Assembly (NCBI RefSeq): GCF_001194135.2
Contig: NC_068981.1
Location: 147,533,353-147,581,740 of the forward strand
Reading direction: 5' to 3'
DNA length: 48,388 bases
Source: Octopus bimaculoides
Lineage: Eukaryota
Below, one piece after another: positions 16,441 through 46,400 of this stretch. A program made the position numbers and the translations under genes. The notes under the pieces were generated by a model. That model had not been told where the DNA came from. It was given only the letters and a program-made list of their open reading frames with translations, and searched no databases. Each line of letters opens with the position of its first letter. The stretch's first letter is position 1.

Positions 16441-17321
16441 AAATGGAGATAATTTTTTTAGAAAATGTGCAAGGGTGAATCTCAACTGGAACAGTGGCTG
16501 ACTTCAAGACATTGCATAAATAAAGTAAAAATGTATTTTGAAGAGCTTAAACATGTAATTTAAAGATTAAATAAACAAAGAATTCATCTTCAAAGTGGGC
16601 AACATCACAGGGATTATTAGAAAACAAATCTTTAGAAACATTATTTTTTAAACCTCAAATTTTTAATGGAAAATTCAAAATTTCAGTAAAAGTAATTCCT
16701 TGACAAATATGAAGTGGTAAAAAAATTTATCGTGTTAATTGCTCCTTTATAGAGACCTATTTAGTCTAAATGGAGCAGACTAAATAATTACACATGAATA
16801 TTTGGGTTATATAAACAGAATTAAGTGCTACTGTTAGCAGATTTTTACTGTGGCATCATACTATGGTCATAGTATTAGAAAGAACTACAGAACTGTAAGA
16901 ATAGTATATACACTTGCTTCTTTCATTTGTTCAAGATTTTTTTATCTTATGTTTTTTATTTGTTTAAGTAATTGGACTGTGGCCATGCTGGGGTACCACC
17001 TTGAAGAATTTTAAGTCAAATGAATTGATTCCAGTATTTAATTATAAGCCGAGTACTTCTATTGGTCTCTTTTGCCAAACTGCTAAGTTACAGGGACATA
17101 AACACACCAACATCAGTTATGAAGTAGTGGGAGGGAGGACAAACACAAAGACACACACACACACACACACATGACTTCTTTCAGTTTCCGTCAACCAAAT
17201 CCACTCATAAGGCTTTCGTTGGCTCAAGGCTATAGAAGACACTTGCTCAAGGTGCCACACAATGGGATTGAACTGAGAACGATGTGGCTGAGAAGCAAGT
17301 TTCTTACCACACAGCCACACC

Positions 17322-19103: not shown

Positions 19104-19270
19104 GGCGCAGGAGTGGCTGTGTGGTAAGTAGCTTGCTTACCAACCACATGGTTCCAGGTTCATTCCCACTGTGTGGCACCTTGGGCAAGTGTCTTCTACT
19201 ATAGCCTCGGGCTGACCAAAGCCTTGTGAGTGGATTTGGTAGACGGAAACTGAAAGAAGCCTGTCGTATA

Positions 19271-19302
<32 letters not shown>

Positions 19303-19525
19303 ATATATATGTATGTGTGTGTATATGTCTGTGTTTGTCCCCCCAACATCGCTTGACAACCGATGCTGGTGTGTTTACGTCCCCGTAACCTTAGCGATTC
19401 GGCAAAAGAGACCGATAGAATAAGTACTAGGCTTACAAAGAATAAGTCCTGGGGTCGATTTGCTCGACTAAAGGCAGTGCTCCAGCATGGCCGCAGTCAA
19501 ATGACTGAAACAAGTAAAAGAGAGA
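19104..19525 (+). mobile_element. Full-length young tRNA-derived SINE (family B) with an internal (TA)/(TG) microsatellite
   Basis: A-box-like TGGCTGTGTGGTAAG, B-box-like GGTTCATTCCC, central CCTTGGGCAAGTGTCTTCTACTATAGCC, internal microsatellite at about 19268-19330, and an AAAAGAG tail. CpGs are intact. Partial copies occur at about 8520-8650(-), 17090-17321(-), 18045-18370(+), 20018-20330(+) and 45890-46000(+). Confidence 0.8.
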
Positions 19526-28939: not shown

Positions 28940-29149
28940 GCCACACACGTGCAATGTACATTCGGAAAAACAAGAAACCTTGCATTTATGGCTTCAATGT
29001 TTTCTTTCATAAGCGTTGTATTGTTTTGTTTCCTCATTTTTCGTCTTTTCACAGAGCAAACTATTCAAACATGTTTGATTGTTTGTTTTTTAAAGGAAGA
29101 GCATTTCTAATTATTAATTATTATTGTCTATGTATTAACAAATACATAC

Positions 29150-29200
29150 CTTTCCAGCAGCTCTGCCTAGTCTAATAATTCCCAGTTTGAAGCTAGACAT
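29150..29200 (-). CDS. ZMYND19: First coding exon of a ZMYND19 (MIZIP, MYND zinc-finger protein 19) orthologue
   Basis: The minus strand reads ATG TCT AGC TTC AAA CTG GGA ATT ATT AGA CTA GGC AGA GCT GCT GGA AAG|GTATGT, giving MSSFKLGIIRLGRAAGK followed by a canonical phase-0 donor. This matches the human ZMYND19 N-terminus as I recall it (MTDFKLGIVRLGRVAGK), where the first intron falls at the same position. Later exons were not found in the window. Confidence 0.82.
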
Positions 29201-29380
29201 GTTTGCTGCACATCGGCGGTAAAGATTGCCATCCAAGTCGGTGCCAGTGCAGAACGTGCAAGACGTCCCTCTCACTGAGGTAATGTTGCCTGTTGTGGCA
29301 TGGACTTCACTCACTCTAACTATAGCTCTCTCTCTCTCTCACTTTAACTAACTTAACTGTCTATCTTCTCGTTGCCAGCA

Positions 29381-29900
29381 CTCACTCAATAACTAAACTG
29401 TTTTCACTCACACTCTCCCAGTTTATGTTATTTCTCCGAACTATAGCTCCTCCCCCTTTCTCTCTCTCTCTCTGTTTTCTCAACTCTTGCTCTCACTCAA
29501 TAACTGAATTGTTTTCACTCACATTCTCCCAATCTGTCTTCTCTCTGAACTGTTCAGCGGTTATGTTCCACTCACTCTAGCTATCCCTCCCTTCCGCTTT
29601 CTCACTATTTGTTTTCTCGACACTTGTACTCACTCAGTAACTAAACCTTTACCTTCACTCTCTCTCCCAGTCTCTGTACTTTTTATATACACTTCATTGC
29701 TGTAATATTTCACACTCTCTGTATCTCTCTATCTTCTAGTCGCTAAACTGAACTGTTTTCACTCACACACTTCCAGTTTCTGCCCATTCTATAAACAATT
29801 CATGGAAGTAGTGTTACTCCACTCATTCCAGCTTGCTTCAGTAACATTTAATCAACTCGTCGCTGCACTCAATAACTAAACTGTTTCTACTCACATTCTA
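29381..29900. repeat. Degenerate motif of about 45 bp repeated five times upstream of the ZMYND19 start
   Basis: Variants of CTCACTCAATAACTAAACTGTTTTCACTCACACTCTCCCAG start at about 29381, 29492, 29629, 29743 (partial) and 29866. Confidence 0.65.
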
Positions 29901-32082
29901 TCCTCCTCACTTTCTCTAAACATTTCAACCTCTCTTATTCTTAGTTTTACTCCTACTTTGTCCCGTTTATCATCCGTCACTCTACCTTTACCTCATTCAA
30001 AATTTTCCGTCTCTCACATTCTTCTTTTATTCCTTCAATTGTTTCATCTCCTGCTTTTTTAGAATTGTTTTTCTTTTCCACTATCTTTTATCCAACTATG
30101 CATTCAGTTTTTTAACCAGCTACCCCTTATCTTTTCCCCACTTTATTTCTGTCTTTGTCCCTCTGCTATTCTTTCCTATTTTCTCCTGTTTAAAAAGAGT
30201 TCTCATTTTTTTTTCATTCTCTGCTCTATCTAGTCATTCTTTACTTTTACATTTCTATTCTACATCTGTGTATCTCTCCTGTTACCTTTTATTATTATTT
30301 TTTTTATCTGATTATCTCTACCGTTCACTAATCTTTTATCGCTCTCCATTCTCACTTTCTCTTTTACACCTCTCCTCTCTCTCTTCTCACATTCAGTATT
30401 TTCTTTCCTCCAAACCGATTCGCTCTCACTCTTTCTCCCTCTTTTAAGATTTCATTATATCTATTATTTCTTTACTCTCATTCTCCTGTACTCTTATCAA
30501 AATTTCCTACTTCCCTATCTTTCTTTGTGCCCATTAATGTCTCTTCTTTCCGCTCCAATTTCGGCTTTCGCATTAGCTGTTTCATTCCTCCCTCCCTGAT
30601 TTCATTAAAATTCTTTTGCAGTTTTTTATTTTTTTCATTTTGCTCTCGAACCTCTTTCAACCTATCAACTCTTACTTTCTCCCACTGGCGCACGAACCAT
30701 AGTTAAATCATTGTAAGCATTACTTCATGTAATCACTTTTTTTTTGTCCCAGTAAACACGATTTTTTCCTTACTCTTACATCCAACCCGACCCAGTTCCT
30801 TGTTATCTCCGTAAACACCTACCCACATTTGAATAACAACCAACTCGGCTTTATTCCCCCACATAGCCACCGTTCATTCATCCTACCTATTGTCTTAATT
30901 TTAGTGCTTTATTCCTCTTTTCTTCTTTTACATACTTATTATTCAAATCCCTATTTTCCGAAACAGCGGTTGATATGATTCTCAGCGATCTTCAAATGAG
31001 ATTTTTTTTTCCTCTTACTATATTGATAACGTAGTTTATAGTGGTATTTCTCTCATGGCAGTTCCACATTGTAACACTGAATAATAGTTTCCAGGTTAAT
31101 TCAAACACATTCTCTACGATTCTGTCTCTTTCTCTGTTTGGCTCTGGACACCTATCAAATTATCGTTCGTAGAAGCACTTTCTATATATTAAAATTTCTT
31201 TTCTTAACACATAGCTCGTCCTAGATGAAATTTATATATTTTTTGTCCTCTATTTCTCCCTATATCAGACAGAACCTCTCCATATCTTTCGCTGTTCTGT
31301 CATCTTCGAATGACATGGTTGGCTTTCTGCTAGGAAGTTCAACTTGTCCTGTACGGCAGTGGAGGAGGCTCAAAGTAGTAGTGACAAGGGGAATAGGAGT
31401 AGTAGTGACTTACGAAGCTAGAGTGATCTCGCCTTAGGTAGGAGGAGGTGTAGTAGCGGTGGTAGTATAAGTAATCACTGTGGTAGCAATGACTTGCGTT
31501 AACGAAGGCGAGGAGAAGAAAAACACGCTGAAACGCCTTGTTGAGTTTTGTCTTTCTGTTAGAATTCCATTCACACCTCGGGTGTTCTATAGAAATATTA
31601 AATCAATCCAATACTTGAATGATACTTTATTTTATCTGCTACAGTAGAATGAAAAGCAATATTAACTTTACTAGAATTTGAACTCAGAGACGTAACTAAA
31701 TAGCGAGTTTGTGCTTTGTTTGTTTTGATTGTTGTTGTTTAGCAGACCCATGGCCTAAAGAAACTCCAGCTTTGACCAACCCATCTTTTATTCAAATACA
31801 GTGCATCTATGACTAGTTTATCAAATGTTGTGTGTGTTGATGAAAATTTAGTTGATATTTCTTGCGTGGAGGCTTTCTCGTTAATTGTTCTTAAAGGCGG
31901 CAAATTAGCGGAAAGTTCGGATGAAACGATTCAGTGATCTGGTTTCGATTCGAGGTTCCAGAAATTTCCTTTTACATCCTGACAATGTCATGAATATCGC
32001 CACATTCCATTTTTAAGTTTTGGCTTTTTATTTTTTTATTTTTTGTAAAATGTTTACCCCGAGTTCCCTCGAATTACTTTTA

Positions 32083-32329
32083 GGTACTACTAAAGCAGCG
32101 CGGACCCGAACGCGCAGTCGCGCGTCCGCGCTAGCTAGTCTTGAGTGGTCGATCCTAACCCTAACCCTATCCCTAACCCTAACAATATCCCTAACCTGCG
32201 TGTGCAAATGAATACGTGTTTAGGGTTAGGGTTAGGATCGACCACTCACGACTAGCTAGCGCGGACGCGCGACTGCGCGTTCGGGTCCGCGCGACTGCGC
32301 GTTCGGGTCCGCGCTGCTTTAGTAGTACC
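32083..32329. mobile_element. Young 247-bp foldback MITE with a 9-bp TSD and internal telomeric repeats
   Basis: TIRs start GGTACTACTAAAGCAGCGCGGACCC. The left arm (32083-32169) matches the right arm (32221-32329) except for one mismatch and a 22-bp duplication in the right arm. The TSD TTACTTTTA is at 32074-32082 and 32330-32338. CCCTAA repeats lie in the left arm and TTAGGG repeats in the right arm. Confidence 0.9.
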
Positions 32330-33342
32330 TTACTTTTATAAGTAAAAACTTTCCTTCTTTTAATACTTGTACAATGAATAAACACGCTTCTTGATTGCAT
32401 GTCCTTTAACAAAAGACTGTCTACGTTAACAAAAACAAAACAATATCCAACATAAAGCCGACGATGGAATACATCTACATGATTGTATGTTTCCTAAAAT
32501 TTTGAGGAAGGTCTTACAAAATAACTTTCATATGATGTTGTGCAACACCAGGCCAACACTGATTCAGCTAACCTATATTCTAGACTCTAGATTATAGGTT
32601 AGCTAGATTCTAGAGCATTACGATCAAGAAGCGAGTCTTCATATCACAGTCCTTTAGATTATGAGTTCAAATCACACTGAGATTGAATTTACCATTTATC
32701 CATCCGGGATCGATACAGGGCACCCTTTATAGCGTTGGTGCCTCGAAAAAATACACATAGTATACTGTAGAATGTGAGACTGGGACCAGCATGGAAAACG
32801 GACGTAAAAAAAAAAATGATGATGCATAGGAGGAAGAGGACATCATGTTTATTCGGTTAACCTCTAGTGTTTGACCCGAGCAAAAAAAAAAAAATTAAAA
32901 AAGAAAATTGTGTAATAGGTGTAAAACAACATGTAGTAAACGAATATGAAAAAGCAATGCGCGCTGGCGAACGTGGGGTGGGGGAGGACTGAAAATTCAC
33001 TTGCCCAAGGTGCTATGTTCCATAGCATGGGCCACCTTACCTAACGGTAGGGCAAGTTACATAAATTGGATCACAAAAAATAGTTTTAGAGGAATCTCTT
33101 TAAGTTTTTGTTGAATGTTTGGTGAGTTTGTAACAAATGAATATCTATAAAAAGATGTTGCAGTAGATTTATCTGTATAACCATATGTTGAAAATAAAAT
33201 CTTTTGGGAAATGTGTTCCAACTAACTCCACCTTTCTCTGCATACAGACAGTTTAGGCTAGACAGAAGAAATTATTTAGTTAAAACTTCTCCATAAGCCA
33301 AATTCTTGGTGCCCAACCTCTCTGTTTTATAATTGTTTACAG

Positions 33343-33387
<45 letters not shown>

Positions 33388-33809
33388 CAAATAGATTTTA
33401 AAAAACTCAGAATGCTACAATTCTCATTTCTTCCTCTGCAAAAAAATTTCATATCTTATGCCTGTATTAGAAAAGAGCATTATAGTTACTTAGAAATAAT
33501 TAAGTAGAAAAAACTAGAAATTACTGTTGCATTTTTAGTTGGAAATAAGTCATTTGTTAAAGTTGAGTGGTAAAATATCAATGCCTGTATTTAGTTACAT
33601 TCTGAGTTCAAATTCAGTTAGCAATTGACCATGTTGTTCATCCCACCCAGGTTGATAAAATTAAGTACAAACACTGGTGCTAAGATCAAGTTAATGACTG
33701 CATCTTGCAAAACTTGTGGGTTTGTGTCTTAATGAACGTTTTTTAACATGCTTTCTTTGACTTTAAGTACATGGAGATATTGAAATATAATTTTTTTTTG
33801 TATAAGTTA

Positions 33810-34870
33810 TTGAGTTGGCCAAACAGCCTGTTCAGCTATTCGCTGACACTAAACTTCAAGCACTCTAATAAGAAGCTGACTTCAGTCTGCTCCTTGTGCA
33901 TGCACATTTGACATTTCAACATAGTTTGATGTGAACTTGCAATGAACCAAGTTTTATTTTATGTGCATAGGGTCACCCTGAAAATTGGAGAATCAGAACT
34001 AGCTTTATTGACATCTCATGCTTTTGTATTTTAAAAAAGGCAGCTAAGTGGCAGAAATCTGCAGGAAGATATGCATTGTGTATGGAGATGTTGTTGCGGA
34101 ATGTGTATGCCAGAAATGGTTTACAAAATTCCAATCAGAAAATTTTTCTGTTCAAGATGCACCTCACTTTGGCCTGCCTGCTGAGATTAACAGGAACATC
34201 CCCACCTCCCATCCTTTATATGACCAGGATGATGGCATATATTCTTCAAATATCCAAATTTTGTGTTGAAAACCATCTGTCTCAACATAGTTATGTCAGC
34301 AGGTTTGATGTTTGCATCTCACATCAGCTGAATGAGGCTAACCTCACCCAATAGATTTTCATTTGTGATTCATTGCAGAAACACAAAGAAAATTATTCTT
34401 TTTTGAAAAAAATGGTGATAGAGGGCAAAAAATGGATTGTCTATAGCAATGTGAAGTGCAAACAATCAAGGGAGAAACATGGTAAATTACCATAAACAAC
34501 CTGCAAGGCAGGACTTCATCCAAAGAAGATTCTGCTTTCAATTTGGTGGGATTTGAAGGGTGTTGTCTTTTATGAGCTTCTTCCCACAGACAGGACCATC
34601 AATTTGGATGTGTACTGTAACCAACTGAACAAATTAAATGCAGTTAGCACTTGTTAGTCATAAGGGCATTGTGAAGCAGCTAGCATTTGTTAGTCTAAGA
34701 GCATCATCTTTCATTATAACAACGCTAGACTGCACGCTTCTTTGCAGATGTGACAGAAGTTACTGGGGCTTGAGTGGGAAGTTTTGCCACACCTATATTT
34801 ACACCTCTAGATTTCCACCTGTTTCTGTCTCTTCAAAATCCACTGAACAGGCCTTCAATTCTGAAGAGGA
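33810..34870 (+). mobile_element. Decayed mariner (DD34D-type) transposon
   Basis: TA is followed by a TIR-like TTGAGTTGGCCAAA at 33810. Peptide remnants include HLSQHSYVSRFDVCISHQLNEANLTQ*IFICDSLQKH...FLKKMVIEGKKWIVYSN (degenerate TGDEKW) and LHPKKILLSIWWDLKGVVFYELLPTDRTINLDVYCNQL. Multiple stops and frameshifts. Confidence 0.85.
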
Positions 34871-36229
34871 ACACAATGGCAATTATATCATTGATTGAAT
34901 AAATCATGTTAGCATTTAAAACTTGTCTTATTTTCACATAAAAATAAATGTGAAGTGAACTTCTCATAACTGCAAGTCTGATGAGTTCCATCCAAATAGC
35001 TTACTTCACTATCTTAATTAATGAGAAACAGTCTCTATGTTAGGGATATCAAATATTTGACTCACAACAGTGTTTAATCTATCCTTCATAATCTGAATTT
35101 CATGAAAAAAATTTAATCATATTTTTAATTTTAGAATATTCTGTAATCTAGCTTGCATTCAGAGCCAGAGCCACTTAAGTGGAATCGTGACTAACATGAG
35201 TTCTGATTAATCAAATCAATATACCTTGGGGAATCTTTTATTTCAACTAATGAAAAAAAATGCATATGAACCCATATACTAAAAGGTGTAATCTATTTCT
35301 CCTTCACTTTGTTTATACATACCAAGCCAAACAAGTTCCCCCCACCGCATCCCACCCCAAATTTACACATGTTTTCATCTGAATAATATCAAAAGGCTTT
35401 GCAGCTGAAACAGAGCATAATTTCTATCAAGCAATGGTTTTCTCAAGAATCTAGCCTGCAAAACTAAATGGATTTGACAACCCTGCTCTATGTGGTTGTT
35501 CAACTGCTAGAAAGAAAAAACAACCGAATCTCCCTTAAATTAGACCATAGCATTTTAAAAGAGGAAGGTCATATAAATAGATGTAAAATATCTAAAAAAT
35601 ATATTAAATGGTCACTGCTGAAATGTCATTAAGCAAAAGTCTGTCTGATCAGAGCTAACTTAGGTTAAATAACAACACCTTCCACCATATGGTATGAAAG
35701 TTTAATTGGCAACCAACCTTGATAGTGTCTTATTAACCAGAATTGACTTTTATCATTGCTCGCTAGTGATATATTTCAATATAAGAAAACATTCAAAATG
35801 TCCCTCATTCACACAAAAGGCAATCTTTTTAACTCCACTAACCTATTGCCTTGATTTCCAACATCCCAAATCTAACAGTAAATGAACGAATATTCCCATC
35901 CTCATGGTTACATGATCTGCTAGAAATAGAAGCTAGTCTCTCCCTAAATTATCTTCATATTCCCTTCAGGATATATAGGGTCAATGGACCCTGAGTTCTC
36001 TGCAACTTGATTTACACTTGGAGTTGATTCCTTTTTCCTCTTTGCGTGTGCTCATAAGCAGTGATGGTTTATGCCCCTGGTTACTGACCCAGACAGTCCA
36101 CCCAGTTATATACTGGTATAGCTGTGGACACAGTAGTTAGTATCTTCTAGAAATATGCTTTAACAAAATCTAAGGAGTGCCTCACTCCCAGTGGTCATGC
36201 AGCATGCTGAGCACTAACTCCAAATTTCT

Positions 36230-36460
36230 GAGTTCCTGCACTAAACCTAATAGATTTCGTCAAACACCTTCTTCATCACTGTGAGTCTTTCTCTCCCTCT
36301 TTATTGATGATCAGTATAGTGTCTTTAATCAGATCTATTTTATAATTCCTTTCTGAGTAATGTAGCACTTTGACAAAAACAATGTTATTGCACTAGACAT
36401 CAACAAAGCCCTGTACTGTGTCTGGCATAAGAGCCTTCTAGCAAAGTTGCCACAGCCTAT
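36230..36460 (+). mobile_element. LINE reverse-transcriptase fragment
   Basis: GCACTAGACATCAACAAAGCCCTGTACTGTGTCTGGCATAAGAGCCTTCTAGCAAAGTTGCCA gives ALDINKALYCVWHKSLLAKLP, a decayed ALDISKAFDRVWH motif. Confidence 0.6.
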
Positions 36461-37323
36461 CATCACTTTTGATAGTTACACATTAATTAATGTGTCCTTT
36501 TTATTGATAGTAGGTTGATGTAAGAAGATTTGGCTGCTATTTCTAGCAGGTTGAGGAACCTCATAGAAGATCCTTTTGTTGGCCCAGATATTGTGTGTGT
36601 GTGTAGCTGAAATATTTTCTGGCCATTTATGTCAATCTGGTTTGCTAAAATATCTTTCACAATGCTAAGTGCTACATCTCATTATACTATCTCTCCATCT
36701 TTCTCTGTAATTTTTGTAGGTTTGTGCCAAGAAGGTGACTTTACATGATCATTCAAGCTGGTAGAAATAGCAGCCAAATTTCATCATCATTATCATTATC
36801 ATTTAGTATCAGTTTTCCATGCTGGCATGGTGGAGGCATGTACGTGGCTTAGTGGCTAGGGTGTTGGACTCATGGGCATAAGATTGTGGTCTTGATTCCT
36901 GGACCAGGCGACGTGTTCTTGAGCAAAACACTTCATTTCATGTTGCTCCAGTCCACTCAGCTGGCAAAAATGAGTAATCCTGCAACAGAGTGATGTCCCA
37001 CCTATGTGGGGAGTATATATGCCATGAAACCTGGAAACCATCCCTTATGAGTTGGTATGACTTAAGGTAACTTTTACTTTACACAGTAGTGTGTCGATAA
37101 GCCAGCTGGAGGAGATGTCCTCCTGGGGCTAAAAGCAACAGTAACATCCACCCCTAGGGGTCAGCCACACTTAAGTGGCAATATACTTCACTTTATCATG
37201 CAGTTACTGTTAATACTTCATTTAGAGAATTAACATTGCTTGTTTTCACCTTTTCGATATCAGTGAAGAATTTCACTGGAAAAGTATACATAAGATTGCC
37301 AAGAATTTATCTCTCTCATCAAA

Positions 37324-37392
37324 GATCAGTGGCTATCGGACGCTGACGAAGGGAGATAACCCTGAAACCCGGGTCTGTTCGTGCTACAGATC
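37324..37392 (+). ncRNA. Type I hammerhead ribozyme, copy 1
   Basis: Core CTGACGA 37343-37349; stem II AGGG/CCCT with loop AGATAA; GAAA 37364-37367; palindromic stem III ACCCGGGT; GUC cleavage triplet with the cut after 37375. Stem I is CGGACG (37337-37342) paired with TGTTCG (37376-37381). It extends past a TAT/T internal loop by GTGGC/GCTAC and past an A-A mismatch by GATC/GATC. Confidence 0.88.
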
Positions 37393-37597
37393 ACGATGGG
37401 AGGGATAACTTCCCTTGGCAAACAGGACACAGTAGTGTGTCGATAAGCCAGCTGGAGGAGATGTCCTCCTGGGGCTAAAAGCAACAGTAACATCCACCCC
37501 TAGGGGTCAGCCACACTTAAGTGGCAATATACTTCACATTATTATANNNNNNNNNNAGTATACATAAGATTGCCAAGAATTTATCTCTCTCATCAAA

Positions 37598-37666
37598 GAT
37601 CAGTGGCTATCGGACGCTGACGAAGGGAAATAACCCTGAAACCCGGGTCCGTTCGTGCTACAGATC
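37598..37666 (+). ncRNA. Type I hammerhead ribozyme, copy 2 (true tandem copy or allelic assembly duplicate)
   Basis: Same fold as copy 1, shifted by 274 nt: CTGACGA 37617-37623, loop II AAATAA, GAAA 37638-37641, cut after 37649, stem I CGGACG/CGTTCG. It is separated from copy 1 by a 10-N gap. Confidence 0.75.
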
Positions 37667-38849
37667 ACGATGGGAGGGATAACTTCCCTTGGCAAACAGG
37701 ACACAGTAGTGTGTGATAAACCAGCTGGAGGAGATGTCCTCCTGGGGCTAAAAGCAACAGTAACATCCACCCCTAGGGGTCAGCCACACTTAAGTGGCAA
37801 TATACTTCACATTATTATAACAATTTCTACTGATTATAACTCACTTTATAATAAATTGATACATTACTTCTGCATTTCAGAGAATTATCAGATGTGGATG
37901 AATTTTACATTAAAACTATATATAATTTTCAAATAACTGTATTGGAATGATTGAAATAACAAGAGTATTTCTGATGGCTTTAAAATTTATGAGACTATGT
38001 TAGGAAAATGGTGATATAGTATGAAGAAATGGAACCTGTGTTTTGAGTCCAGAGAATACAAGTAATTCCTAAAGTTAGATTGATGAATTTGTCTGATGAG
38101 ACAATTGATTAAAATTAAAATTTTAATCATTCTAAGGATTGAGATAATTCATCAATTTGATTAAAGGAAAGATTGTAAAAAATATAAGTGAGGATATTTT
38201 GAGATGGTTATTTTTCTTTTCTAAAAGGACTTCTTTGAAAATCTTTGACTTCATAATTAACAAAAAATTTCTAATTTATTTGAGATTAAAAAAAAAAAAA
38301 TTATTCAGAACAGACTGCTCCTCATGTCCTTTACATGCTCTTCCCAGATAGCTATGGTCGACGCACTTAATTAAGTGCAGCTTCAAAACTGCACTTAACA
38401 CTTTGATAAGTTCTTTGTCTGGAGAGGAAGGATTCAGCAAGTATCAAGTGCAGGCTTCAAGAAGGTGACACATTAAGAATAATGAGAGGTGAAAAAGAGG
38501 TAAATGGATCAGGTGGGCTTGGGGGTGATAACTATATAACTTGCCGGTTTAGTAGAGCAAAATCCATTAAAGTAGCTGAAAGAAATAAGTATGTCAGTGA
38601 ACTAGTAGATGTTATGTAGCGATAAGTGAATCATTGCCTATTGGCTGAACGGTCTTTTTTGTAGTCTTGGACAATGTTTCTCATAGGGAGAGGAATGAAT
38701 ATAAGGAGTGTAAAGTGGGACAAACAAAAGCAGAGAAAGGAAAGTATATTTTGTTGTACTTCCAACTTTAAAATAATGGCAAAGAAAAAAAAATTATAAG
38801 GATGCAAATGTTATCTTCTCATTACTAAGGAGCAGAGGCACAAAAAAAA

Positions 38850-40220
38850 TCTTGCTAATATTTGGTGGAGTGGATCTGGTATTTGTCATTTTGAGAATCT
38901 CTGGTCTAAAGTGTTTCTGTTTGTAGTAGTAATTACACTGTTCTAAATATGTGAGCAATACTTCAGCATGGGTCACATTTGAACTTCAGAGACAGCATCT
39001 GATTAGAATTAATGGAATGAGACAATTGGACCTGATTATTTGGACCTTCATAATTTGACATGGTAGACTAGGCATTCAACCTCCTTTGGCAACAGTACAT
39101 TTGATAATAACAGCAAACACACAGAAATATATACATATAGGTAAGGTGAGAGAGACATTGCACATACATACAAACATAACTAGATGCTTATGCACATAAA
39201 CAGAGAGTGAGAACAAGTCACTGTATGATGTTAAGTCTGCATTGAATCAATGAATCCAAAATGATGGTATCAAAATGGCTGTGCCAAAACGTCTCATACC
39301 CTAGAACTGAAGTATCTTTTAGTTAAAGAGATGAAATCTAGTCTTTGGAGTCTGGTTTTGGCAATGCTATATACATGTGGTCTTTCCATGAAAATGGTTA
39401 TTAAATTATAGCATGGTAAGTTCAAGGATTTTAGCTGTGTGTTGTTTATGTGTGAGGATAGTGAGGCACAAGACTGTTTTCTTGCTACATGTAATGATTG
39501 TGTCTTGGTACTATTGAAGGACGTTTTCAATCTCTCTATGAAGGATTTATATGCAGTAAATGCCACTGAATTAAGCAAAAAAAAACCACTTGAACATTAT
39601 ACTGTATAAAGATCTGGATAACCCTACAACACAGTAAAAAATACATATGATAAGCTGCTGTTTGAAAATCTTTAAGTTCTCAAATATGAAATGCAGAATG
39701 AAGGTTGCAACAGCATTAAAAGCAGTGCTCCATCATGATTACAGTCAATTAGCTACAATTAGTAAAATGATAAAAAAGCAACAAAGATATTTAATTTATC
39801 AATCCAGGATTTTGATTAAACTGACCCTGTTAAGATTTGAACTGAGATATAAACTACAAGATATATCAGAATTCAACCATTCTGATTTATGTTTGTTGTG
39901 TTGGACTTCTTTGAAGTGTATTCAGTAAACACTTTCCTGATATGTGTAATGATAGTGTCTTGGTACTGTTGAAGGATGTTTTCGATCTCTGTTTATGGAG
40001 TAGAATGAATGAAGAGTCTCGGTTATGTGTGGAAGACAACTGGGTATGCAAGATAGCATCATCTACATAGGCGTATGTAGTGTTAGAAGTGACAGCGGAG
40101 AAGCCATTAATGTACAGAAGACAAACATTGAGTTATCCTGATTAGCTCTGTTCAAACAAGCTTCTGTGATTAGTATTCTAGTTAAGACATTGCATCTTTA
40201 TTATGGGATGGCATATATTA
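38850..40220 (-). mobile_element. Fragmented CR1-like LINE RT region interrupted by two insertions
   Basis: At about 40040-40130 the minus strand gives LLYINGFSAVTSNTTYAYVDDAILH (degenerate YADD). At 39300-39535 it gives FNSTKTQSL...HVYSIAKTRLQRLDFISLTKRYFSS. Weaker remnants continue to about 38850. Confidence 0.6.
39542..39926 (+). repeat. Dispersed duplicate of about 385 bp; the other copy is at 44011-44397
   Basis: Colinear similarity from CAGTAAATGCCAC through GAAATGCAGAATGAAGGTTGCAACAG to GTTGGACTTC...GAAGTGTATTCAGT, with many substitutions. Confidence 0.8.
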
Positions 40221-40812
40221 AGATTTAGAACTAAGAAGACATAGTCTCTATTTTAAAGACTGTGCAGAAGTTCTTTTTTTTTTTTGTAAGAAAACTTTAC
40301 TGTTTGATTGTGTAAATTGAATAACTAGTTTAAAGCTCCCTTATTAGGTCACATAACTATAAAAATGTTTGGTATTTTCAACAATGTTCATATTTTTATA
40401 ACATAGAACCACTTGTGTTTGAAAGGATAAAATAAGAAAATATATATGTCAGTAGAAACATTAATAAAAAAGAATTATAAATTTGCAATGAAAATAAGAA
40501 ATATTTAATGGGATATTCTTGTAATGTATCATCTTCATCATGTTGTTAACATGATGGATAGAATTAGTTCCAGCAAATATATATACATATGTGTGTGTAT
40601 GTGTATGCATACATGCATGTGTATATATACATACATGTATACACACACACACACACATTTATGTATTTGTTTTGCAACTTCTTGATGTGAAATTGTGTGT
40701 TGAAATAGATATCATTATATTTGGGAATGGTCATCTTTTGCCATTAAACACATGCACTATTTATTTAATCTTTACCTTAGCTTTATTATTATTATTATTA
40801 TTATTATTAGTT

Positions 40813-41205
40813 CTGGCAGAAACGTTAGCATGCCGGGCGAAATGCTTAGCGGTATTTCGTCTGTCTTTACGTTCTGAGTTCAAATTTCGCCGTGGTCGAC
40901 TTTGCCTTTCATCCTTTCAGGGTCGATAAATTAAGTACCAGTTACGCACTGGGATCGATGTAATCGACTTAATCCGTTCGTCTGTTCTTGTTTGTTCCCT
41001 CTATGTTTAGCCCCTTGTGGGCAATAACGAAATAGGTATTTCGTCTGTCTTTATGTTCTGAGTTCAAATTCTGTTGAGGTTGACTTTGCCTTCCATCCTT
41101 TCAGGGTCAATAAATTAAGTACCAGTTGCATACAGGGTCAATCTAATCAACTGGACTCCTCCCCCAAAATTTCGGGCCTTGTGCCTAGAGTAGAAAAGAT
41201 TATTA
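40813..41205 (+). mobile_element. Young tRNA-derived SINE (family A) followed by a second partial copy
   Basis: A-box-like TGGCAGAAACGTTAGC, B-box-like GAGTTCAAATT, central GTCGACTTTGCCTTTCATCCTTTCAGGGTCGATAAATTAAGTACCAG, and an (ATT)n tail. Decayed copies occur at about 6972-7170(+), 7185-7390(+), 22150-22350(-), 22690-22870(-), 33580-33720(+), 43780-43970(-), 44430-44620(-) and 44870-45000(-). Confidence 0.8.
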
Positions 41206-41483
41206 TTATTAGTTGATTTGTCAAAGTTTTTTTGTCACATTCTGTGACCTCTACAGCAACTTTCTGCATCTTGTGTCTCCTCTTCTCTCTAGTCTTGTCT
41301 TGTCTATTCCATTTTGTCTTTCTGTGGTATGCACCCCCATCTGCATGTGTGTTTACATTTACAACTGTGTGTGTGTCTCTGTGTGTTTAGTATGTGTATG
41401 TGTGTCTTGTGTGCATGTATATAAGTTTGTATATTACACTGTTTGTACCTGAATCTTTTTTCTTTTCTTTTCTCATTCTGTCT

Positions 41484-41610
41484 TTAGTAATTATGTTGTA
41501 TAATGTGGTGGAGTAGGTGGGGGGGTGTTATTACTCCATTTGTATTTTCTGTTGAGGCTCGGTCTATTTTCTGTTTTGTGTGTAGCCTCTGTAATCTGTC
41601 TGAGTGTTGT
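41484..41610 (-). mobile_element. Inverted copy of the Penelope-like element 3' end (inverted pLTR-type segment)
   Basis: The reverse complement encodes TLRQITEATHKTENRPSLNRKYKWSNNTPHLLHHIIQHNY*, which is homologous to about 42183-42245 (ACACTCAGACAGATT...AGAAAATAGACC...CCTCAACAGAA). Confidence 0.7.
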
Positions 41611-41659
41611 GTCTGTTCTACATAGATCATTACATCTATGTTATCTACTGAGCCCCCAA

Positions 41660-42270
41660 TTATGCAAATGGGATCTGTCCACTATACAAGAGTAAATCAT
41701 AGAATAATACAGAAGGAGTTAAGAGGAAGATAGGTAAGGCCAACTCATGGTATGACAACCAAAGATATCAGAGTGTCATGTTTGTTGATGGATGCAAACT
41801 AACAATCATTTTAGAAAAGCCTTAGGTAAGATTAATCTATGGATTAAAGTAATAGAAAGACCAGGAACTCCCATCAAAACTCTGATCTGTAGAATATACC
41901 CATTTGTAAAAAAACTCTGTATGAATAGGAACTGTATAGTGTGTAGAGTAAGCCCACAGATAAACTGTAAAACTAGGAATGTTGTCTATAGTATAAGGTG
42001 TGCAGAGGGATGATGCAGTAATAGGACAACAAAGTACACTGGAGAGACAGCCTGTAGCATAGGTGAGAGGATAAGTGATACTGACAGGAATTCAAGGAGG
42101 AGAAAAGCCATCAGTAGTATACCCATGTGCTAAATTAGAACATAGGGGCTTGGTAGATAATATAGATGTTAAGATGTTGTTGACACTCAGACAGATTATG
42201 GAGGTCACACACATAAAAGAAAATAGACCAACCCTCAACAGAAGACTACAGCAAAGCAAACACTGGAGTA
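41660..42270 (+). mobile_element. Penelope-like retroelement remnant (linker plus GIY-YIG endonuclease, with stop and frameshift)
   Basis: Translates as ...IKVIERPGTPIKTLICRIYPFVKKLCMNRNCIVCRVSPQINCKTRNVVYSIRCAEG*CSNRTTKYTGETACSIGERIS, then a frameshift to EKPSVVYPCAKLEH...LRQIMEVTHIKENRPTLNR. This shows the VVY-x-I-x-C / Y-x-GET / R-x-I-x-E...LN pattern of PLE GIY-YIG domains, preceded by a Cys cluster. Confidence 0.8.
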
Positions 42271-42429
42271 CAATGCAATACTTGGACCCATCAGATTCTG
42301 TCAAATTGCCCATGTGTATATATATCTATCTATCTATCTATATATATATATATATATATATATATNNNNNNNNNNNNNNNNNNNNNNNNNNNNNNNNNNN
42401 NNNNNNNNNNNNNNNTATATATATGTATA

Positions 42430-43440
42430 CAGGGTGTGGCAAATAAATTGCCGTCTGAATTACGCAAAAATGAAAATAACACTGACATCTCATTTTAACA
42501 GATATATTTACCAAAATTACATAAAAATATCTTGAAATACTAAAGATTAACTTTATCCAATAAAATTGCCATTGGCTTCAACCATGGCCTCCAGATGGCT
42601 TTGGAATCTCCTGCAACTCTTCTAGATGGTCTCCTTGTTTAAGTTGGTGAATACTGCTATAATCCTTGCCTTCAGTTCATCTTTAGTGTTACAAGGAATT
42701 TTGTTGGTCTCTCGCTCAACTGTGGGTTGCAGTCTGGGGAAGTAGGTGGCCACATGTTAGATGTAATGTGGTAGAAATTGTCTGACAGCCATGACTGGGT
42801 TCGCCTGCTTGGTGACATGGTGCAGAGTCTTGTTGCCAGATATAGGGTCTTCCAGCAGCCACCCTCTTGACCCAGGACAGCACTACCTCCTCCAGGCATT
42901 TGATGTAGGCCTCTGTGTTGAGTGTAAGGCCATGTGGGAAGATGAATGGAGGCATAATGTTGCCATCACTAGTGATCACTCCAAACACTATAATGTTGAT
43001 TGGATGTTTGATTTTTATCACACTTGGTACATGTTTTGGGGACACAGTAAGCTAACAGTTCTGTGTGTTCACCATCTGATCCTGGCAGAATTTTTCCGTC
43101 TGGGTAAAACCAAAGCATGTTCAGTTGAGTTTGTTCAAAAGCTTTGTAGCACAGTCTTTCCTCTTGTTAATCGCTTGGGATAAAAATTGGCCCTTTCTCA
43201 TCTTGTATGAGGAATACTGAATGTCTTCATGCACTACTTGCCTGATAAGAAACTCAGACACTCCCATATCTCTGGTGATGAACCTGATTGACCTGGAGGA
43301 ATTGTTGTCAATGGCCTGGATCTCACCAACAAATTTATGAGTTTTTTTCTTATCAGAACGATCAGATTGAGTTTTCCAAACTGCTCTACCTTCATAATCA
43401 CCATTAGACTCATCCAACTCTTTCCGAATGCTCTGCAACA
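42430..43440 (-). mobile_element. Tc1/mariner-superfamily remnant, maT/DD37D-like
   Basis: ORF fragments include SRSIRFITRDMGVSEFLIRQVVHEDIQYSSYKMRKGQFLSQA, IVFGVITSDGNIMPPFIFPHGLTLNTEAYIKCLEEVVLSWVKRVAAGRPYIWQQDSAPCH and NMWPPTSPDCNP. The 3' TIR CAGGGTGTGGCAAATAAA follows TA at 42428-42429. The 5' TIR was not seen. Confidence 0.82.
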
Positions 43441-46400
43441 ACAACAACAAAGCCTAGTTTTCATTGCTTGTATGGGTCAGTTGGAATTCATTGAGGTGGG
43501 TTTTTTTTATGGCTGGACATCTTTCCTGTCACCAGCCTTTACTTGTATACATACTAGGATATATTTCCCCATGACAGTACACTTTTCCCTAAAAAACTGG
43601 AAATAACAATACTGCTTGTATGATGGCGATACTCATTTACAACTATTTTGTTATGTCCAGAAGTGGACAAACATGCACATATACACATATATACATATCG
43701 ACATATATACATACAACTGATTTTTTTTAGCTTCTGTCTACCGAATTCACTCATAAAAAATAATTTCTCTTTTAATATTGGTTTCAAATTTCGGCACAAA
43801 GCCAGCAATTTCGGTGGTGGAGACATGCTGATTATATTGATCCCATTGCTCAGCTGGTATTATTTTATTGACCCAAAAGGATGAAAGACAAAGTTGATCA
43901 CAGCAGAATTTGAACTCAGAATGTAAAGATGGACCTTACTTGGCATGCTAATGATTCTGCTAGCATGGCGGCATTTTCCCTTTTAACATTACCCTGCAAA
44001 AAAACAGAAAGGGTTTGTATACAGTAAATGCCACCAAATTAAAAAAAAAACACTTGGACATTATACTGCATACAGATCTGGATAGTCCTACAACACAGCA
44101 AAAAATATACACAATAAGGTGCTGTTTGAAAATCTTTTAATTCCCAAATATGAAATGCAGAATGAAGGTTGCAACAGTCTTAAAGACAGTGCTCCATCAT
44201 GATAATAGTCAGTTAGGTATAACTAGTAAAATAATAAAAAGGCAACAAAAATATTTAATTTATTAATCCAGGATTTTGATTGAATTGATACCACTAAGAT
44301 TTGTACTGAGATATAAGCTACAAGATATATCAGAATTCAGGGGTTAATCATTCTGATTTATATCCATTGTGTTGGACTTCATGGAAGTGTATTCAGTTAC
44401 TCATTGTAAGCATTTAATTTTAAAATTCATATTGGTTTCAGACTTTGGCATAAGGCCAGCAATTCCAGGGGAGAGGAAAGCTGATTACATTGACCCCAGT
44501 GCTCAGCTGGTACTTATTTTATCAACCCTAAAAGGATGAAAGGCAAAATCGACTGTAGTGGAAATTGAACTCAGAACATATGCCCAGCATGCTAGTGATT
44601 CTGTCAGCACACCACCTTAATTTTATGATTTATATTACCTCAAGAATTGAAAGCTTAGAATCTAGCCTTAGCATCATCTCTATTGGCATTCCATTCTGTA
44701 CTTCACATTAGTCCATCCTTGAAGACTTCCAGTTGCATCTCAGGTATTTTTGTTAGAAGGTGGCATTGAATCTTCACTCAACTCTTTTTCCTTTCTAAAG
44801 AAAGGGATGCTATGCTGTGAAACATCCCTAATGACCCTTCTCATGGTACAACATATCAGAGTCAAAGAAAATCAACTGGTACTTTATTTATCATCTCTAG
44901 AAGGACGTGAAGCAAAGCTAACTTTGATAAGATTTGAACTCAGAGCTGGAACAAATACTGCATGGCATTTTATCTGATACTCTAAAGATGCTGCTAATTT
45001 CCCACCTTATTCTGCTGAGCATTAAGATTTGATAAAAAGAAAATAAATTTAGCTACTGTATTAATAAGTTGAGTGACATATATAGAAAGTCTCTAATTGT
45101 CTTTGAAGTTATGCTGCTAACTTCAAGAAATGCTTTAGTCAGCAATTTACTGAAGATACATAATAGAAAAATAAAGAAATTTTATAGATATTTCATATAA
45201 CATTTCTTCAGAAATTCTTCTTTCAAAACTGTATGCAGAGATATTTTGAAAATGTACTGCTGTTTCTCATAATAGAATTTAACTTAGCTTGCGTATGCAT
45301 TAATTTATTTTGTATTGTTATTATTCAGCTCCAGATCAGTCCTGATCAAACAAACCCAAGATCAAAGACAGTCCATTCATGATCAACTCATATTTTTTAT
45401 TTTCAGTCTTTAAGATGGTAGACAGTGGGTTGAGGGAAAGTTGGCTGCTATTTCTAGTGGACCAAACGACCACATAGAGGCTCCTTTGATGGCTTGATTT
45501 ACTTCATTAAACTTGTTCTAATGAACAATCTTACTCATAGAATGAAAAGGGTTTTGTGTAGTTAGAAATGTGGAAACACAGCATAGCAACATAGTCAAGG
45601 CTGAACTTAAAAATGGTGCATTAACCACACTAGTATTCTTATGTTATTGATAGCTCACAATACATTTACAAGAAGGAGCCATGACAATACATTACATCAC
45701 ACACCATAAAATAAAGGTAGATAGAGGGATTTAAAACATTTTATCCAAAACAATGAGATTAATCATTGAAACTATATGAATAGCACAATGCAAGGCAAAA
45801 TACACATGCATATATTGTACAGTGATAACGAAAAAAGACCACTCTCTGATATAGGATAAAATAAGAAAGGGAGAAATATCAATACTTAGCCCCAAGCCAA
45901 CCAAAGCCTTGTGAGTGGATTCAGTAGATTAGATAGAAACTAAATGAAGCTTGTCACGTGTGTGTGTGTGTGTGTGCATGAGGGTGTTTGTGTCTTGTGA
46001 CTGAATGATTGTTTGCCATAATACCAAGCATCACCATAATACAAGCAGTGTTATTTGTTTCCCATCTTCTGTGGAAACATATTAAGCTATGGAGAAATAT
46101 TAACTTAATTGGAAGTAGATGAGTTGGTGACAGGAAGAGTATCTGCCCTTAGAAAATCTGCCCAGCAAATTCCATCTGATCCATGCAGGCATGAAAAGTA
46201 AGCATTAAAATGAGGATGATGTTAATAATGATGATGATGATGATATGCACACTCATATGTAGGTAAATGTGAATAGAGTGTAGTCAAAAATATACATGCA
46301 TATCATCATGTTGCATGTTTGCTTATCTTTCCAGCCTTAGATCCAACTTTTCAAACGTTTTTCATTTTTTACCTTGGAAAAAGTGACCATAGTGTATCTC

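What the first reader, a model, noticed from the sequence alone, without database searches (positions are those of the whole stretch)
37081..37810. Candidate retrozyme: small non-coding retroelement with a complete type I hammerhead ribozyme
Seen: every conserved hammerhead core nucleotide (CUGACGA, GAAA, GUC cleavage site), a 4-bp stem II, and a long stem I. Stem I has 6 bp, a UAU/U internal loop, 5 bp, an A-A mismatch and 4 bp. The motif sits in a hairpin-rich unit with no ORF, and its CpGs are intact inside a CpG-depleted region, which suggests a young insertion. Established: type I hammerheads use a stem-I bulge to loop-II contact (as in Schistosoma Sm-alpha), and tandem hammerhead repeats of a few hundred nt in animals (non-LTR retrozymes) produce self-cleaved monomers and circRNAs and are thought to be mobilised by Penelope-like RTs. 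Inference: this is such an element, and I do not know of one described from this lineage.
Basis: partly seen in the sequence, partly recalled or inferred. Interest (0 to 1): 0.9.

Follow-up and report, generated by a model that had tools for sequence, protein, structure and literature searches.

The report
Hammerhead-ribozyme tandem repeat (retrozyme) in octopus
A 346-base non-coding repeat in what looks like an octopus genome carries a complete self-cutting hammerhead RNA motif in each copy, which makes it a new example of a mobile-element class (non-LTR retrozymes) already known in many animals, mussels included.

Summary
A 346-nt unit is repeated head to tail: copy 1 at 37081-37426, copy 2 at 37427-37700 (broken by the N gap), and a 119-nt partial copy 3 to about 37819. 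Each complete unit carries a canonical type I hammerhead: CUGACGA, 4-bp helix II, GAAA, a 2-bp helix III capped by the palindromic tetraloop CCGG, and GUC with cleavage at 37375/76 and 37649/50. Helix I is 6 bp, a UAU/U internal loop, 5 bp, A-A, 4 bp.

Rfam finds no hammerhead. A covariance model built only from four experimentally tested retrozyme hammerheads (coral, mussel, two axolotl) ranks these two sites first (21-22 bits, E about 5e-4; next hit 10 bits). The unit has no ORF, 43.6% GC and an unusually stable plus-strand fold (z = -6.1). Two copies are predicted to form a double hammerhead. No reverse transcriptase or GIY-YIG endonuclease lies within 6 kb.

The host is octopus-like. This is a new member of a known kind. 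Not tested: cleavage, circular RNA and genome-wide copy number. The gap hides about 82 nt, so locus copy number is uncertain. The CpG argument for a young insertion is weak. Interest is about 0.3, not 0.9.

The parts
37081..37426 (+). Repeat unit, copy 1 (complete, 346 nt, 43.6% GC, no ORF)
37427..37546 (+). Copy 2, unit positions 1-120. Its last bases (cacattattata) are identical to the copy 3/flank junction.
37547..37556 (.). Assembly gap (10 N) standing for unit positions 121-202, about 82 nt if copy 2 is complete. The true copy number at the locus is uncertain.
37557..37700 (+). Copy 2, unit positions 203-346 (98.6% identical to copy 1). Contains hammerhead 2.
37701..37819 (+). Copy 3, truncated (unit positions 1-119, 96.6% identical to copy 1). 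No hammerhead.
37324..37392 (+). Hammerhead ribozyme 1, type I. Helix I 37324-37342 / 37376-37392; CUGACGA 37343-49; helix II 37350-63; GAAA 37364-67; helix III 37367-74. Predicted cleavage after C37375.
37598..37666 (+). Hammerhead ribozyme 2. Predicted cleavage after C37649. It differs from hammerhead 1 only in loop II (G to A) and at position 1.1 (U to C, turning a U-G pair into C-G).
37295..37421 (+). Long imperfect hairpin arm whose inner end is helix I of hammerhead 1, continuing outward for about 20 more base pairs (GAUUGCCAAG.../...CUUGGCAAAC).
37834..37890 (+). Older, diverged piece (about 75% identity) of unit positions 101-155, directly after the young array.
   Evidence: score 34; shuffles 20.3 +/- 2.6, maximum 32

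Best explanation
This is a short tandem array of a non-autonomous, non-coding repeat of the non-LTR retrozyme kind, in the genome of an octopus-like cephalopod. Each 346-nt unit encodes one canonical type I hammerhead ribozyme on the plus strand.

Proposed working. Steps 2-5 are inferred from tested retrozymes of coral, mussel and axolotl and were not shown here.
1. The array is transcribed as a multimer of plus polarity.
2. Helix III of a single motif is too weak to hold the active fold (2 bp plus a tetraloop; it costs +1.4 kcal/mol). Two neighbouring motifs therefore pair through the 8-nt palindrome ACCCGGGU into a double hammerhead, and each cuts after its GUC (37375/76 and 37649/50).
3. 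This releases a 346-nt monomer with 5'-OH and 2',3'-cyclic phosphate ends. Helix I and its roughly 45-bp extension hold the two ends side by side.
4. A host RtcB-type tRNA ligase closes the monomer into a highly self-paired circular RNA.
5. The RNA is copied back into DNA and inserted by the reverse transcriptase and endonuclease of an autonomous element, most likely a Penelope-like element. This yields tandem copies.

Shown here are the sequence anatomy, its statistical distinctness, the predicted folds and the absence of coding capacity.
For: Core and helices were read from the sequence and verified pair by pair.

My descriptor hits only these two sites and expects 0.007-0.07 by chance per window.

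Covariance model R1 was built solely from four experimentally tested retrozyme hammerheads taken from Supplementary Table 2 of PMC7229834.
- It gives 22.1 and 21.2 bits (E = 3.7e-4 and 6.9e-4) for the two sites. Both match the full length of the model with every pair canonical.
- The next window hit scores 10.3 bits, E = 1.1.
- There are no hits at E<=1 in 40.8 kb of control DNA, comprising an Octopus bimaculoides locus and an ENA contig that shares the mariner fragment.

The geometry matches that of the amphibian hammerheads. My reading of the Ax330 and Ax353 sequences gives the same helix I layout (6 bp, 3-nt/1-nt internal loop, then 5 and 4 bp); Ax330 also has a 6-nt loop on a 4-bp helix II. 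The helix III layout A-C-[4-nt palindrome]-G-U matches mussel Mg353 (ACGCGCGU). PMC4209133 defines the canonical metazoan motif as helix I 6 bp, helix II 4 bp, and helix III 1-2 bp capped by a 2-4-nt palindromic loop.

The only two differences between the two hammerheads are in loop II and a U-G to C-G change within helix I.

The cofold of two motifs gives the double hammerhead, with an 8-bp intermolecular helix III, as the minimum-energy structure at -58.8 kcal/mol.

The circular monomer folds at -112.4 kcal/mol, z = -6.1 on the plus strand and -3.1 on the minus strand. Seventeen control windows reach -4.2 at most (linear fold z = -5.3).

The unit is 346 bp, 43.6% GC, with no ORF above 62 aa.

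ORF pieces of at least 45 aa from 31-44 kb match only mariner domains, with no RT or GIY-YIG.

Octopus vulgaris carries Penelope-like elements (PMC13282606), so a candidate autonomous partner exists in the lineage.
Against: Rfam release 15 reports no hammerhead family, even at E<=10 on a 111-nt stretch.

Pair 10.1-11.1 is A-U instead of the usual G-C. This could lower activity, although axolotl HHR_Amex2 has a U-U mismatch there and still cleaves (PMC7229834).

Only one locus was seen. There is no other copy in the window and none in the collections I could search, none of which is known to hold the source genome.

No target-site duplication was found.

The second hammerhead lies beyond an assembly gap. 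The contig end left of the gap is identical to the array/flank junction, so a redundant join that leaves only one hammerhead at the locus cannot be excluded.

The monomer's minimum-energy fold is not the hammerhead fold (-25.2 against -18.3 kcal/mol).

There are no expression or cleavage data.
Confidence: 0.8

Rival explanations
1. The repeat is a terminal pseudo-LTR of a Penelope-like element, left here as a tandem remnant without its ORF. It would not be an independent small element with its own RNA life cycle.
For: Hammerheads sit in PLE pseudo-LTRs (PMC4209133). Xenopus retrozyme families are sister to PLE pseudo-LTRs (bioRxiv 10.64898/2026.07.22.740005). Octopus genomes hold PLEs (PMC13282606).
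Against: - Metazoan PLE hammerheads are described as minimal or atypical: helix II of 6-8 bp, a short helix I, and little or no helix III (PMC4209133; PMC7229834). This motif is the canonical 6/4/2-bp form.
- The units abut directly with a 346-nt period.
- No RT or GIY-YIG signal occurs in 31-44 kb, and no ORF above 194 aa occurs anywhere in the window.
Confidence: 0.1
2. The tandem arrangement is partly an assembly artefact. The sequence after the gap (37557-37819) would be a redundant or allelic copy of 37283-37546. The locus would then hold about 1.35 units with a single hammerhead, that is, a solo copy that cannot release a monomer.
For: The contig left of the gap ends in cacattattata, the same bases that form the copy 3/flank junction. 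The two stretches are collinear with 4 differences in 264 nt. The gap is a minimal 10-N placeholder, whereas the tandem model predicts 82 nt.
Against: A contig break exactly at the point where an internal copy and the last copy diverge is what a short-read assembler produces for a true tandem array, because the graph branches there (inference). Copy 2-left lacks the two variants of copy 3 (a 1-nt deletion and G to A near 37714-37720). Even a solo copy would still belong to the same element family.
Confidence: 0.15
3. The locus is a dead relic. It would be a real hammerhead-bearing repeat by descent, but not transcribed, or catalytically impaired by A10.1-U11.1, and with no present function.
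For: Only one small array was seen. Pair 10.1-11.1 is non-consensus. An older, decayed fragment of the same unit lies next to the array. Most copies of any repeat family are silent (general knowledge).
Against: Copies are 97-99% identical. All core nucleotides are intact in both hammerheads, and the one change inside a helix improves pairing.
Confidence: 0.2
4. The motif is hammerhead-like by chance, inside an ordinary local tandem duplication.
For: At 0.007 strict chance hits per 48-kb window, a genome of a few gigabases should hold hundreds of chance motifs. Rfam does not call this one.
Against: Several independent features coincide. The tandem period lies in the retrozyme range. Helix III is fully palindromic. 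Helix I extends to about 35 further pairs. The fold is strand-specific at z = -6.1. The independent covariance model scores 11 bits above background. The geometry matches that of tested ribozymes. None of the core-pattern matches in metagenomes has the helices.
Confidence: 0.03

Closest known systems
Non-LTR retrozymes of metazoans (Cervera & de la Pena 2020, PMC7229834), especially the Mytilus galloprovincialis 350-390-bp repeats and the axolotl/newt 330-350-bp 'satellite 2' repeats
   Same: - A tandem unit of a few hundred bp (346), low GC, no ORF, and no LTR, PBS or PPT.
- One canonical type I hammerhead per unit, and a highly self-paired predicted circular RNA.
- Helix III of 2 bp plus a palindromic tetraloop, as in 'invertebrate HHRs'. 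The 8-nt palindrome has the same layout as mussel ACGCGCGU.
- The same helix I geometry as axolotl Ax330 and Ax353 (6 bp, 3/1 internal loop); the distal helix is 5 bp in Ax330 and 4 bp in Ax353.
   Different: - No sequence similarity outside the ribozyme core (such repeats are species-specific).
- A10.1-U11.1 at the base of helix II.
- Only 2.3 units at one locus were seen.
- Expression, cleavage and circularisation are untested.
- The host lineage (octopus-like cephalopod) is not among those described in the papers I could search.
Schistosoma Sm-alpha and newt satellite hammerheads (classical type I motifs that are active as dimers)
   Same: Type I topology, a weak helix III, predicted dependence on a double-hammerhead conformation, and a helix I internal loop facing a 6-nt loop II.
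   Different: The loop I-loop II tertiary contact here is inferred from geometry only. The nucleotides involved could not be checked with the tools at hand. My recollection of the Sm-alpha loops is from memory and was not used as evidence.
Hammerheads in pseudo-LTRs of Penelope-like elements (Cervera & de la Pena 2014, PMC4209133)
   Same: Type I hammerheads in direct repeats of an animal genome, thought to act as dimers. PLEs are the likely source or mobiliser.
   Different: PLE motifs in animals are minimal, with a long helix II, a short helix I and little or no helix III, and they flank an RT/GIY-YIG ORF about 3 kb long. Here the motif is canonical, the repeats abut, and no such ORF lies within 6 kb.
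Plant LTR retrozymes (Cervera et al. 2016, PMC4918200)
   Same: Non-autonomous retroelements whose hammerheads excise a circular RNA intermediate.
   Different: The plant elements have type III hammerheads within LTRs, with PBS, PPT and 4-bp TSDs, are 600-1000 nt long and have GC above 55%. None of this applies here.
Rfam Hammerhead_1 (RF00163)
   Same: The same ribozyme class and topology by manual analysis.
   Different: The Rfam scan reported no hammerhead family at or below E = 10, so an Rfam-based annotation such as the 235 giant-squid loci in PMC6962438 would miss this family.

Membership tests
Canonical metazoan type I hammerhead ribozyme (definition in PMC4209133) | Conserved core CUGANGA ... 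GAAA ... UH with the A15.1-U16.1 pair | tested here: met
   CUGACGA 37343-49, GAAA 37364-67, A37367-U37374, GUC 37373-75. The same holds in copy 2.
Canonical metazoan type I hammerhead ribozyme (definition in PMC4209133) | Helix I of about 6 bp and helix II of about 4 bp, with helix I open (type I topology) | tested here: met
   Helix I is 6 bp up to the internal loop. Helix II is 4 bp with a 6-nt loop. Helices II and III are capped, and helix I leads into the rest of the unit. The base pair of helix II is A-U, not G-C.
Canonical metazoan type I hammerhead ribozyme (definition in PMC4209133) | Helix III of 1-2 bp capped by a 2-4-nt palindromic loop, allowing a dimeric active form | tested here: met
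   A-U plus C-G capped by CCGG. ACCCGGGU is an 8-nt palindrome, and the dimer minimum-energy structure is the double hammerhead.
Canonical metazoan type I hammerhead ribozyme (definition in PMC4209133) | Tertiary contact between loop I (helix I internal loop) and loop II | not testable with these tools
   The geometry (3/1 internal loop after 6 bp; 6-nt loop II) equals that of axolotl Ax330, which its authors describe as having all the conserved interactions. Nucleotide-level contacts were not assessed.
Canonical metazoan type I hammerhead ribozyme (definition in PMC4209133) | Self-cleavage at the predicted site | not testable with these tools
   Needs in vitro transcription of monomer and dimer.
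Canonical metazoan type I hammerhead ribozyme (definition in PMC4209133) | Match to a covariance model of the family | tested here: inconclusive
   Rfam gives no hammerhead hit at gathering score or at E<=10. My model, built from four tested retrozyme hammerheads, gives 22.1 and 21.2 bits, E about 5e-4, as the top two hits.
Non-LTR retrozyme (PMC7229834; operational rule in bioRxiv 10.64898/2026.07.22.740005) | [quoted passage not shown] | tested here: met
   346-nt unit, 2.3 copies, two complete hammerheads. The result depends on the join across the gap at 37547-37556.
Non-LTR retrozyme (PMC7229834; operational rule in bioRxiv 10.64898/2026.07.22.740005) | Low GC (below 45-50%), non-coding, no LTR/PBS/PPT | tested here: met
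   GC is 43.6%. The longest open frame in a multimer is 62 aa. The units abut without other terminal structures.
Non-LTR retrozyme (PMC7229834; operational rule in bioRxiv 10.64898/2026.07.22.740005) | Monomer RNA predicted to be highly self-paired | tested here: met
   Circular fold at -112.4 kcal/mol, 57% of bases paired, z = -6.1. The minus strand gives -3.1, and control windows reach -4.2 at most.
Non-LTR retrozyme (PMC7229834; operational rule in bioRxiv 10.64898/2026.07.22.740005) | Many dispersed copies or arrays in the genome; target-site duplications when present | tested here: inconclusive
   No second locus in the window. No TSD (p = 0.8). The source genome could not be searched, and the collections available gave nothing.
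Non-LTR retrozyme (PMC7229834; operational rule in bioRxiv 10.64898/2026.07.22.740005) | Expressed as linear and circular monomer RNA | not testable with these tools
   No transcriptome access.
Non-LTR retrozyme (PMC7229834; operational rule in bioRxiv 10.64898/2026.07.22.740005) | Co-existence with autonomous Penelope-like elements in the host genome | not tested
   Literature only: O. vulgaris has PLE families (PMC13282606). There are none in this window. The host species of the window is inferred only.
Penelope-like element (pseudo-LTR with hammerhead) | RT plus GIY-YIG ORF between or next to the repeats | tested here: not met
   Pfam on all open stretches of at least 45 aa from 31-44 kb finds only mariner HTH_48 and Transposase_1. 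No long ORF exists in the window.

The most novel reading that the evidence does not exclude
This is a young, still active retrozyme family of octopuses that makes abundant small circular RNAs. Its arrays would grow by re-insertion beside older copies of themselves. The young array abuts a 75%-identical older fragment of the same unit at 37834-37890, which would be a trace of homology- or microhomology-primed reverse transcription at a pre-existing copy. That could explain how tandem retrozyme arrays arise.
Probability: 0.1. Interest if true: 0.55.

Novelty: new member of a known kind. Interest (0 to 1): 0.3.

Why it matters
If confirmed, this extends the known range of hammerhead-bearing circular-RNA retroelements to cephalopods. 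Cephalopod genomes are about half repeats, and their repeat annotations do not mention such elements (PMC13282606). The case also shows that Rfam-based annotation misses this family. It would give a defined 346-nt, self-processing, self-paired RNA to look for in octopus tissues. It would not change the picture of what retrozymes are or how they work, because the class, its ribozyme architecture and its presence in molluscs are already published.

Tried and rejected
- Rfam at gathering score on the whole window, and at E<=10 on 1.1 kb and on 111 nt. No hammerhead or other ribozyme family was found; only chance sRNA and snoRNA matches appeared.
- Tandem Repeats Finder returned nothing, probably because of the N run and only 2.3 copies. 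The repeat was recovered with the repeat finder and blastn.
- Search for other copies through translated frames of the unit against the 5.8-billion-protein collection: no hit.
- Exact-pattern scans for the family-specific hammerhead in metagenome, prokaryotic-genome and viral contigs: none.
- A looser core pattern in metagenomes gave 24 loci, all without helices I and II. These are chance matches, useful only as a control.
- Target-site duplication: none above chance.
- Left flank compared with the unit: no similarity.
I redid it with open stretches joined by X.
- The 1593-aa gene on the ENA contig L002 was checked as a possible PLE: no Pfam domain.
- The tRNA scan and the bacterial promoter/terminator scan are uninformative for this eukaryotic locus.
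- A minus-strand ribozyme (viroid-like, both polarities) was considered and rejected. There is no motif on the minus strand and its fold is weaker.
- A role as an intronic or 3'-UTR mRNA-processing hammerhead was considered and judged unlikely, because the motif sits in a tandem repeat with a dimer-dependent helix III. Gene context could not be determined.
Full report
THE SEQUENCE

The region holds a head-to-tail repeat with a 346-nt unit.
- Copy 1 is complete (37081-37426).
- Copy 2 runs 37427-37546 (unit positions 1-120), then the 10-N gap (37547-37556), then 37557-37700 (unit positions 203-346).
- Copy 3 is truncated (37701 to about 37819, unit positions 1-119).

Identities to copy 1 are 98.3%, 98.6% and 96.6%. 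No other copy exists in the 48-kb window. Tandem Repeats Finder missed the array.

THE ASSEMBLY GAP

The bases on the two sides of the gap map to unit positions 120 and 203. If copy 2 is complete, the 10 N stand for about 82 nt, and the true spacing of the two ribozymes is 346 nt rather than 274. Reading frame is irrelevant because nothing here is coding.

One caution remains. The contig left of the gap ends in 'cacattattata', which is exactly the copy 3/flank junction. In addition, 37283-37546 and 37557-37819 are collinear with only 4 differences. A redundant join, leaving a single ribozyme at the locus, cannot be excluded.

I consider a true tandem more likely. A contig break at the point where an internal copy and the terminal copy diverge is what a short-read assembler produces at such a branch. 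This is inference. The array could also be longer than assembled.

THE RIBOZYME

Read directly and verified pair by pair:
- CUGACGA at 37343-49.
- Helix II AGGG/CCCU with loop AGAUAA.
- GAAA at 37364-67.
- Helix III: A-U and C-G capped by CCGG.
- GUC, with cleavage predicted at 37375/37376.
- Helix I: 6 bp, a UAU/U internal loop, 5 bp, an A-A mismatch and 4 bp.

The second copy (cleavage at 37649/37650) differs only by G to A in loop II and by U to C at position 1.1, which turns a U-G pair into C-G. One departure from the usual consensus is that base pair 10.1-11.1 is A-U rather than G-C.

IS IT MORE THAN CHANCE?

A simple descriptor (core, helix I of at least 4 bp, helix II of at least 3 bp, a minimal helix III) finds only these two sites on either strand of the window. 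In 300 simulated sequences it finds 0.07 hits per window, or 0.007 at the observed helix lengths. Across a genome of gigabases that still allows hundreds of chance motifs, so the motif alone is not sufficient.

No hammerhead family appears at gathering score, nor at E<=10 on 1.1 kb or on 111 nt.

I therefore built an independent test. The four retrozyme hammerheads whose self-cleavage was shown experimentally are coral Amil224, mussel Mg353, and axolotl Ax330 and Ax353. I took their sequences from Supplementary Table 2 of PMC7229834, aligned them and made a covariance model with the textbook structure.

Searching the whole window with filters off gives the following:
- The two sites are the top hits at 22.1 and 21.2 bits (E = 3.7e-4 and 6.9e-4; the calibration is rough).
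- Both match the full length of the model with all 12 pairs canonical.
- The next hit scores 10.3 bits (E = 1.1).

The model finds nothing at E<=1 in 40.8 kb of control DNA, comprising an Octopus bimaculoides locus and an ENA contig that shares the mariner fragment.

As a further control, 24 metagenome loci (25 matches; one search lists 24) fit the bare linear core CTGACGA-N12-16-GAAACCCGGGTC. None has helices I and II together.

ARCHITECTURE COMPARED WITH TESTED RIBOZYMES

PMC4209133 defines the canonical metazoan type I motif as helix I 6 bp, helix II 4 bp, and helix III 1-2 bp capped by a 2-4-nt palindromic loop, working as a dimer. All of these are met.
- The 8-nt palindrome ACCCGGGU has the same layout as mussel ACGCGCGU.
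- The helix I layout (6 bp, 3-nt/1-nt internal loop, then 5 bp) and the 6-nt loop on a 4-bp helix II equal those of axolotl Ax330; Ax353 shares the 6-bp helix and 3/1 loop, with a 4-bp distal helix and a 5-nt loop II. This is my reading of the sequences.
[quoted passage not shown] It also notes that axolotl HHR_Amex2 has a U-U mismatch at the base of helix II and still cleaves. The A-U pair here is therefore not disqualifying.

PREDICTED FOLDS

The single motif does not favour the active fold. The hammerhead structure has -18.3 kcal/mol against a minimum of -25.2, and helix III costs +1.4 kcal/mol. Two motifs together have the double hammerhead, with an 8-bp intermolecular helix III, as their minimum-energy structure at -58.8 kcal/mol.

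Helix I continues outward into a long imperfect hairpin (about 37295-37421). This hairpin would hold the two ends of a cleaved monomer together.

The 346-nt monomer folded as a circle reaches -112.4 kcal/mol with 57% of bases paired.
- z = -6.1 against dinucleotide shuffles on the plus strand.
- z = -3.1 for the minus strand.
- Seventeen control windows from the same sequence reach -4.2 at most.

CODING CAPACITY AND NEIGHBOURS

No frame of a multimer is open for more than 62 aa. GC is 43.6%.

All open stretches of at least 45 aa between 31 and 44 kb match only mariner-type transposase domains (HTH_48, Transposase_1). There is no reverse transcriptase or GIY-YIG endonuclease. The longest ORF in the whole window is 194 aa and consists mostly of gap. 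The array is therefore not the pair of terminal repeats of an intact Penelope-like element.

No target-site duplication is detectable. Directly after the array, 37834-37890 is about 75% identical to unit positions 101-155 (score 34 against 20.3 +/- 2.6 in shuffles). This is an older fragment of the same unit.

THE CpG ARGUMENT

CpG observed/expected is 0.49 in the unit and 0.34 in the rest of the window, and 23% of equal-sized windows reach the unit's value. The unit is itself CpG-depleted. The 'intact CpGs, hence young' argument is weak. The 97-99% identity between copies is the better sign of recent origin or homogenisation.

HOST

A mariner fragment at 42716-43045 is 74% identical in protein to an Octopus bimaculoides entry. 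A 146-nt repeat at 19375-19520 is 92% identical to O. bimaculoides chromosome DNA. The window therefore comes from an octopus or a close relative. The species was not determined.

WHAT IT IS AND HOW IT MOST LIKELY WORKS

This is a non-LTR retrozyme-type repeat. By analogy with the tested coral, mussel and axolotl elements (PMC7229834), the following steps are inferred and were not shown here.
1. A multimeric plus-strand transcript self-cleaves through double hammerheads.
2. This releases a 346-nt monomer.
3. An RtcB-type ligase circularises the monomer.
4. The RNA is reverse-transcribed and inserted by an autonomous element, most likely a Penelope-like element.

Such elements are present in Octopus vulgaris (PMC13282606). 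The 2026 preprint 10.64898/2026.07.22.740005 derives vertebrate retrozymes from their pseudo-LTRs.

KNOWN OR NEW

The class is published and described as widely but patchily distributed among animal phyla, including a mollusc. The giant-squid genome paper lists 235 Rfam hammerhead_1 loci (PMC6962438). In the searchable library, no paper describes retrozymes in octopus or other cephalopods, and the detailed O. vulgaris repeat annotation does not mention them.

The finding is a new member of a known kind, of moderate-to-low interest (0.3). I place 0.8 confidence on the sequence-level identification. Cleavage, circular RNA, genome-wide copy number and the exact copy number at this locus remain to be shown.

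Noticed in passing
window 32082-32330: A near-perfect CpG-rich foldback. Arms 32098-32169 and 32221-32292 are 72 nt and 99% complementary, with a 51-nt spacer. The outer 43-nt arms are 100% complementary. It carries inward-facing telomere-type hexamers, (CCCTAA)n at 32153-32182 and (TTAGGG)n at 32220-32237 (6 matches against 0.2 expected). It lies 5 kb upstream of the hammerhead array. No hammerhead was found in it and no link to the array was shown. Endonuclease-lacking Penelope-like elements are known to combine reverse-complement telomeric repeats with hammerheads (PMC8557442).
   Followed up: partly
window 37834-37890: The right flank of the array is about 75% identical to unit positions 101-155. 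This means an older, diverged fragment of the same unit sits 15 nt after the young array ends.
   Followed up: partly
window 42428-43450 (- strand), and + strand pieces within 31000-44000 (not mapped more finely): Decayed mariner (Mos1-type) transposon remnants. The plus-strand pieces match Pfam HTH_48 and Transposase_1. The minus-strand piece is 74% identical in protein to an Octopus bimaculoides entry.
   Followed up: partly
window 36790-37060: A sequence that looks like a tRNA-derived SINE directly abuts the left end of the array. ARAGORN finds no tRNA, and only short, weak matches occur elsewhere in the window.
   Followed up: partly
window 36528-36554 / 36753-36779: A 27-nt inverted repeat (93% complementary) encloses 198 nt, just upstream of the SINE-like sequence. 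It may be a small foldback or MITE.
   Followed up: no
window 29000-31000: Strong strand asymmetry (GC skew -0.43 to -0.58, AT skew -0.26 to -0.40) from a long C/T-rich low-complexity tract.
   Followed up: no
window 17171-17300 and 19039-19360; L001: A repeat family next to (TA)n/(CA)n microsatellites recurs in the window. One piece, 19375-19520, is 92% identical to Octopus bimaculoides chromosome CM046625.1.
   Followed up: no
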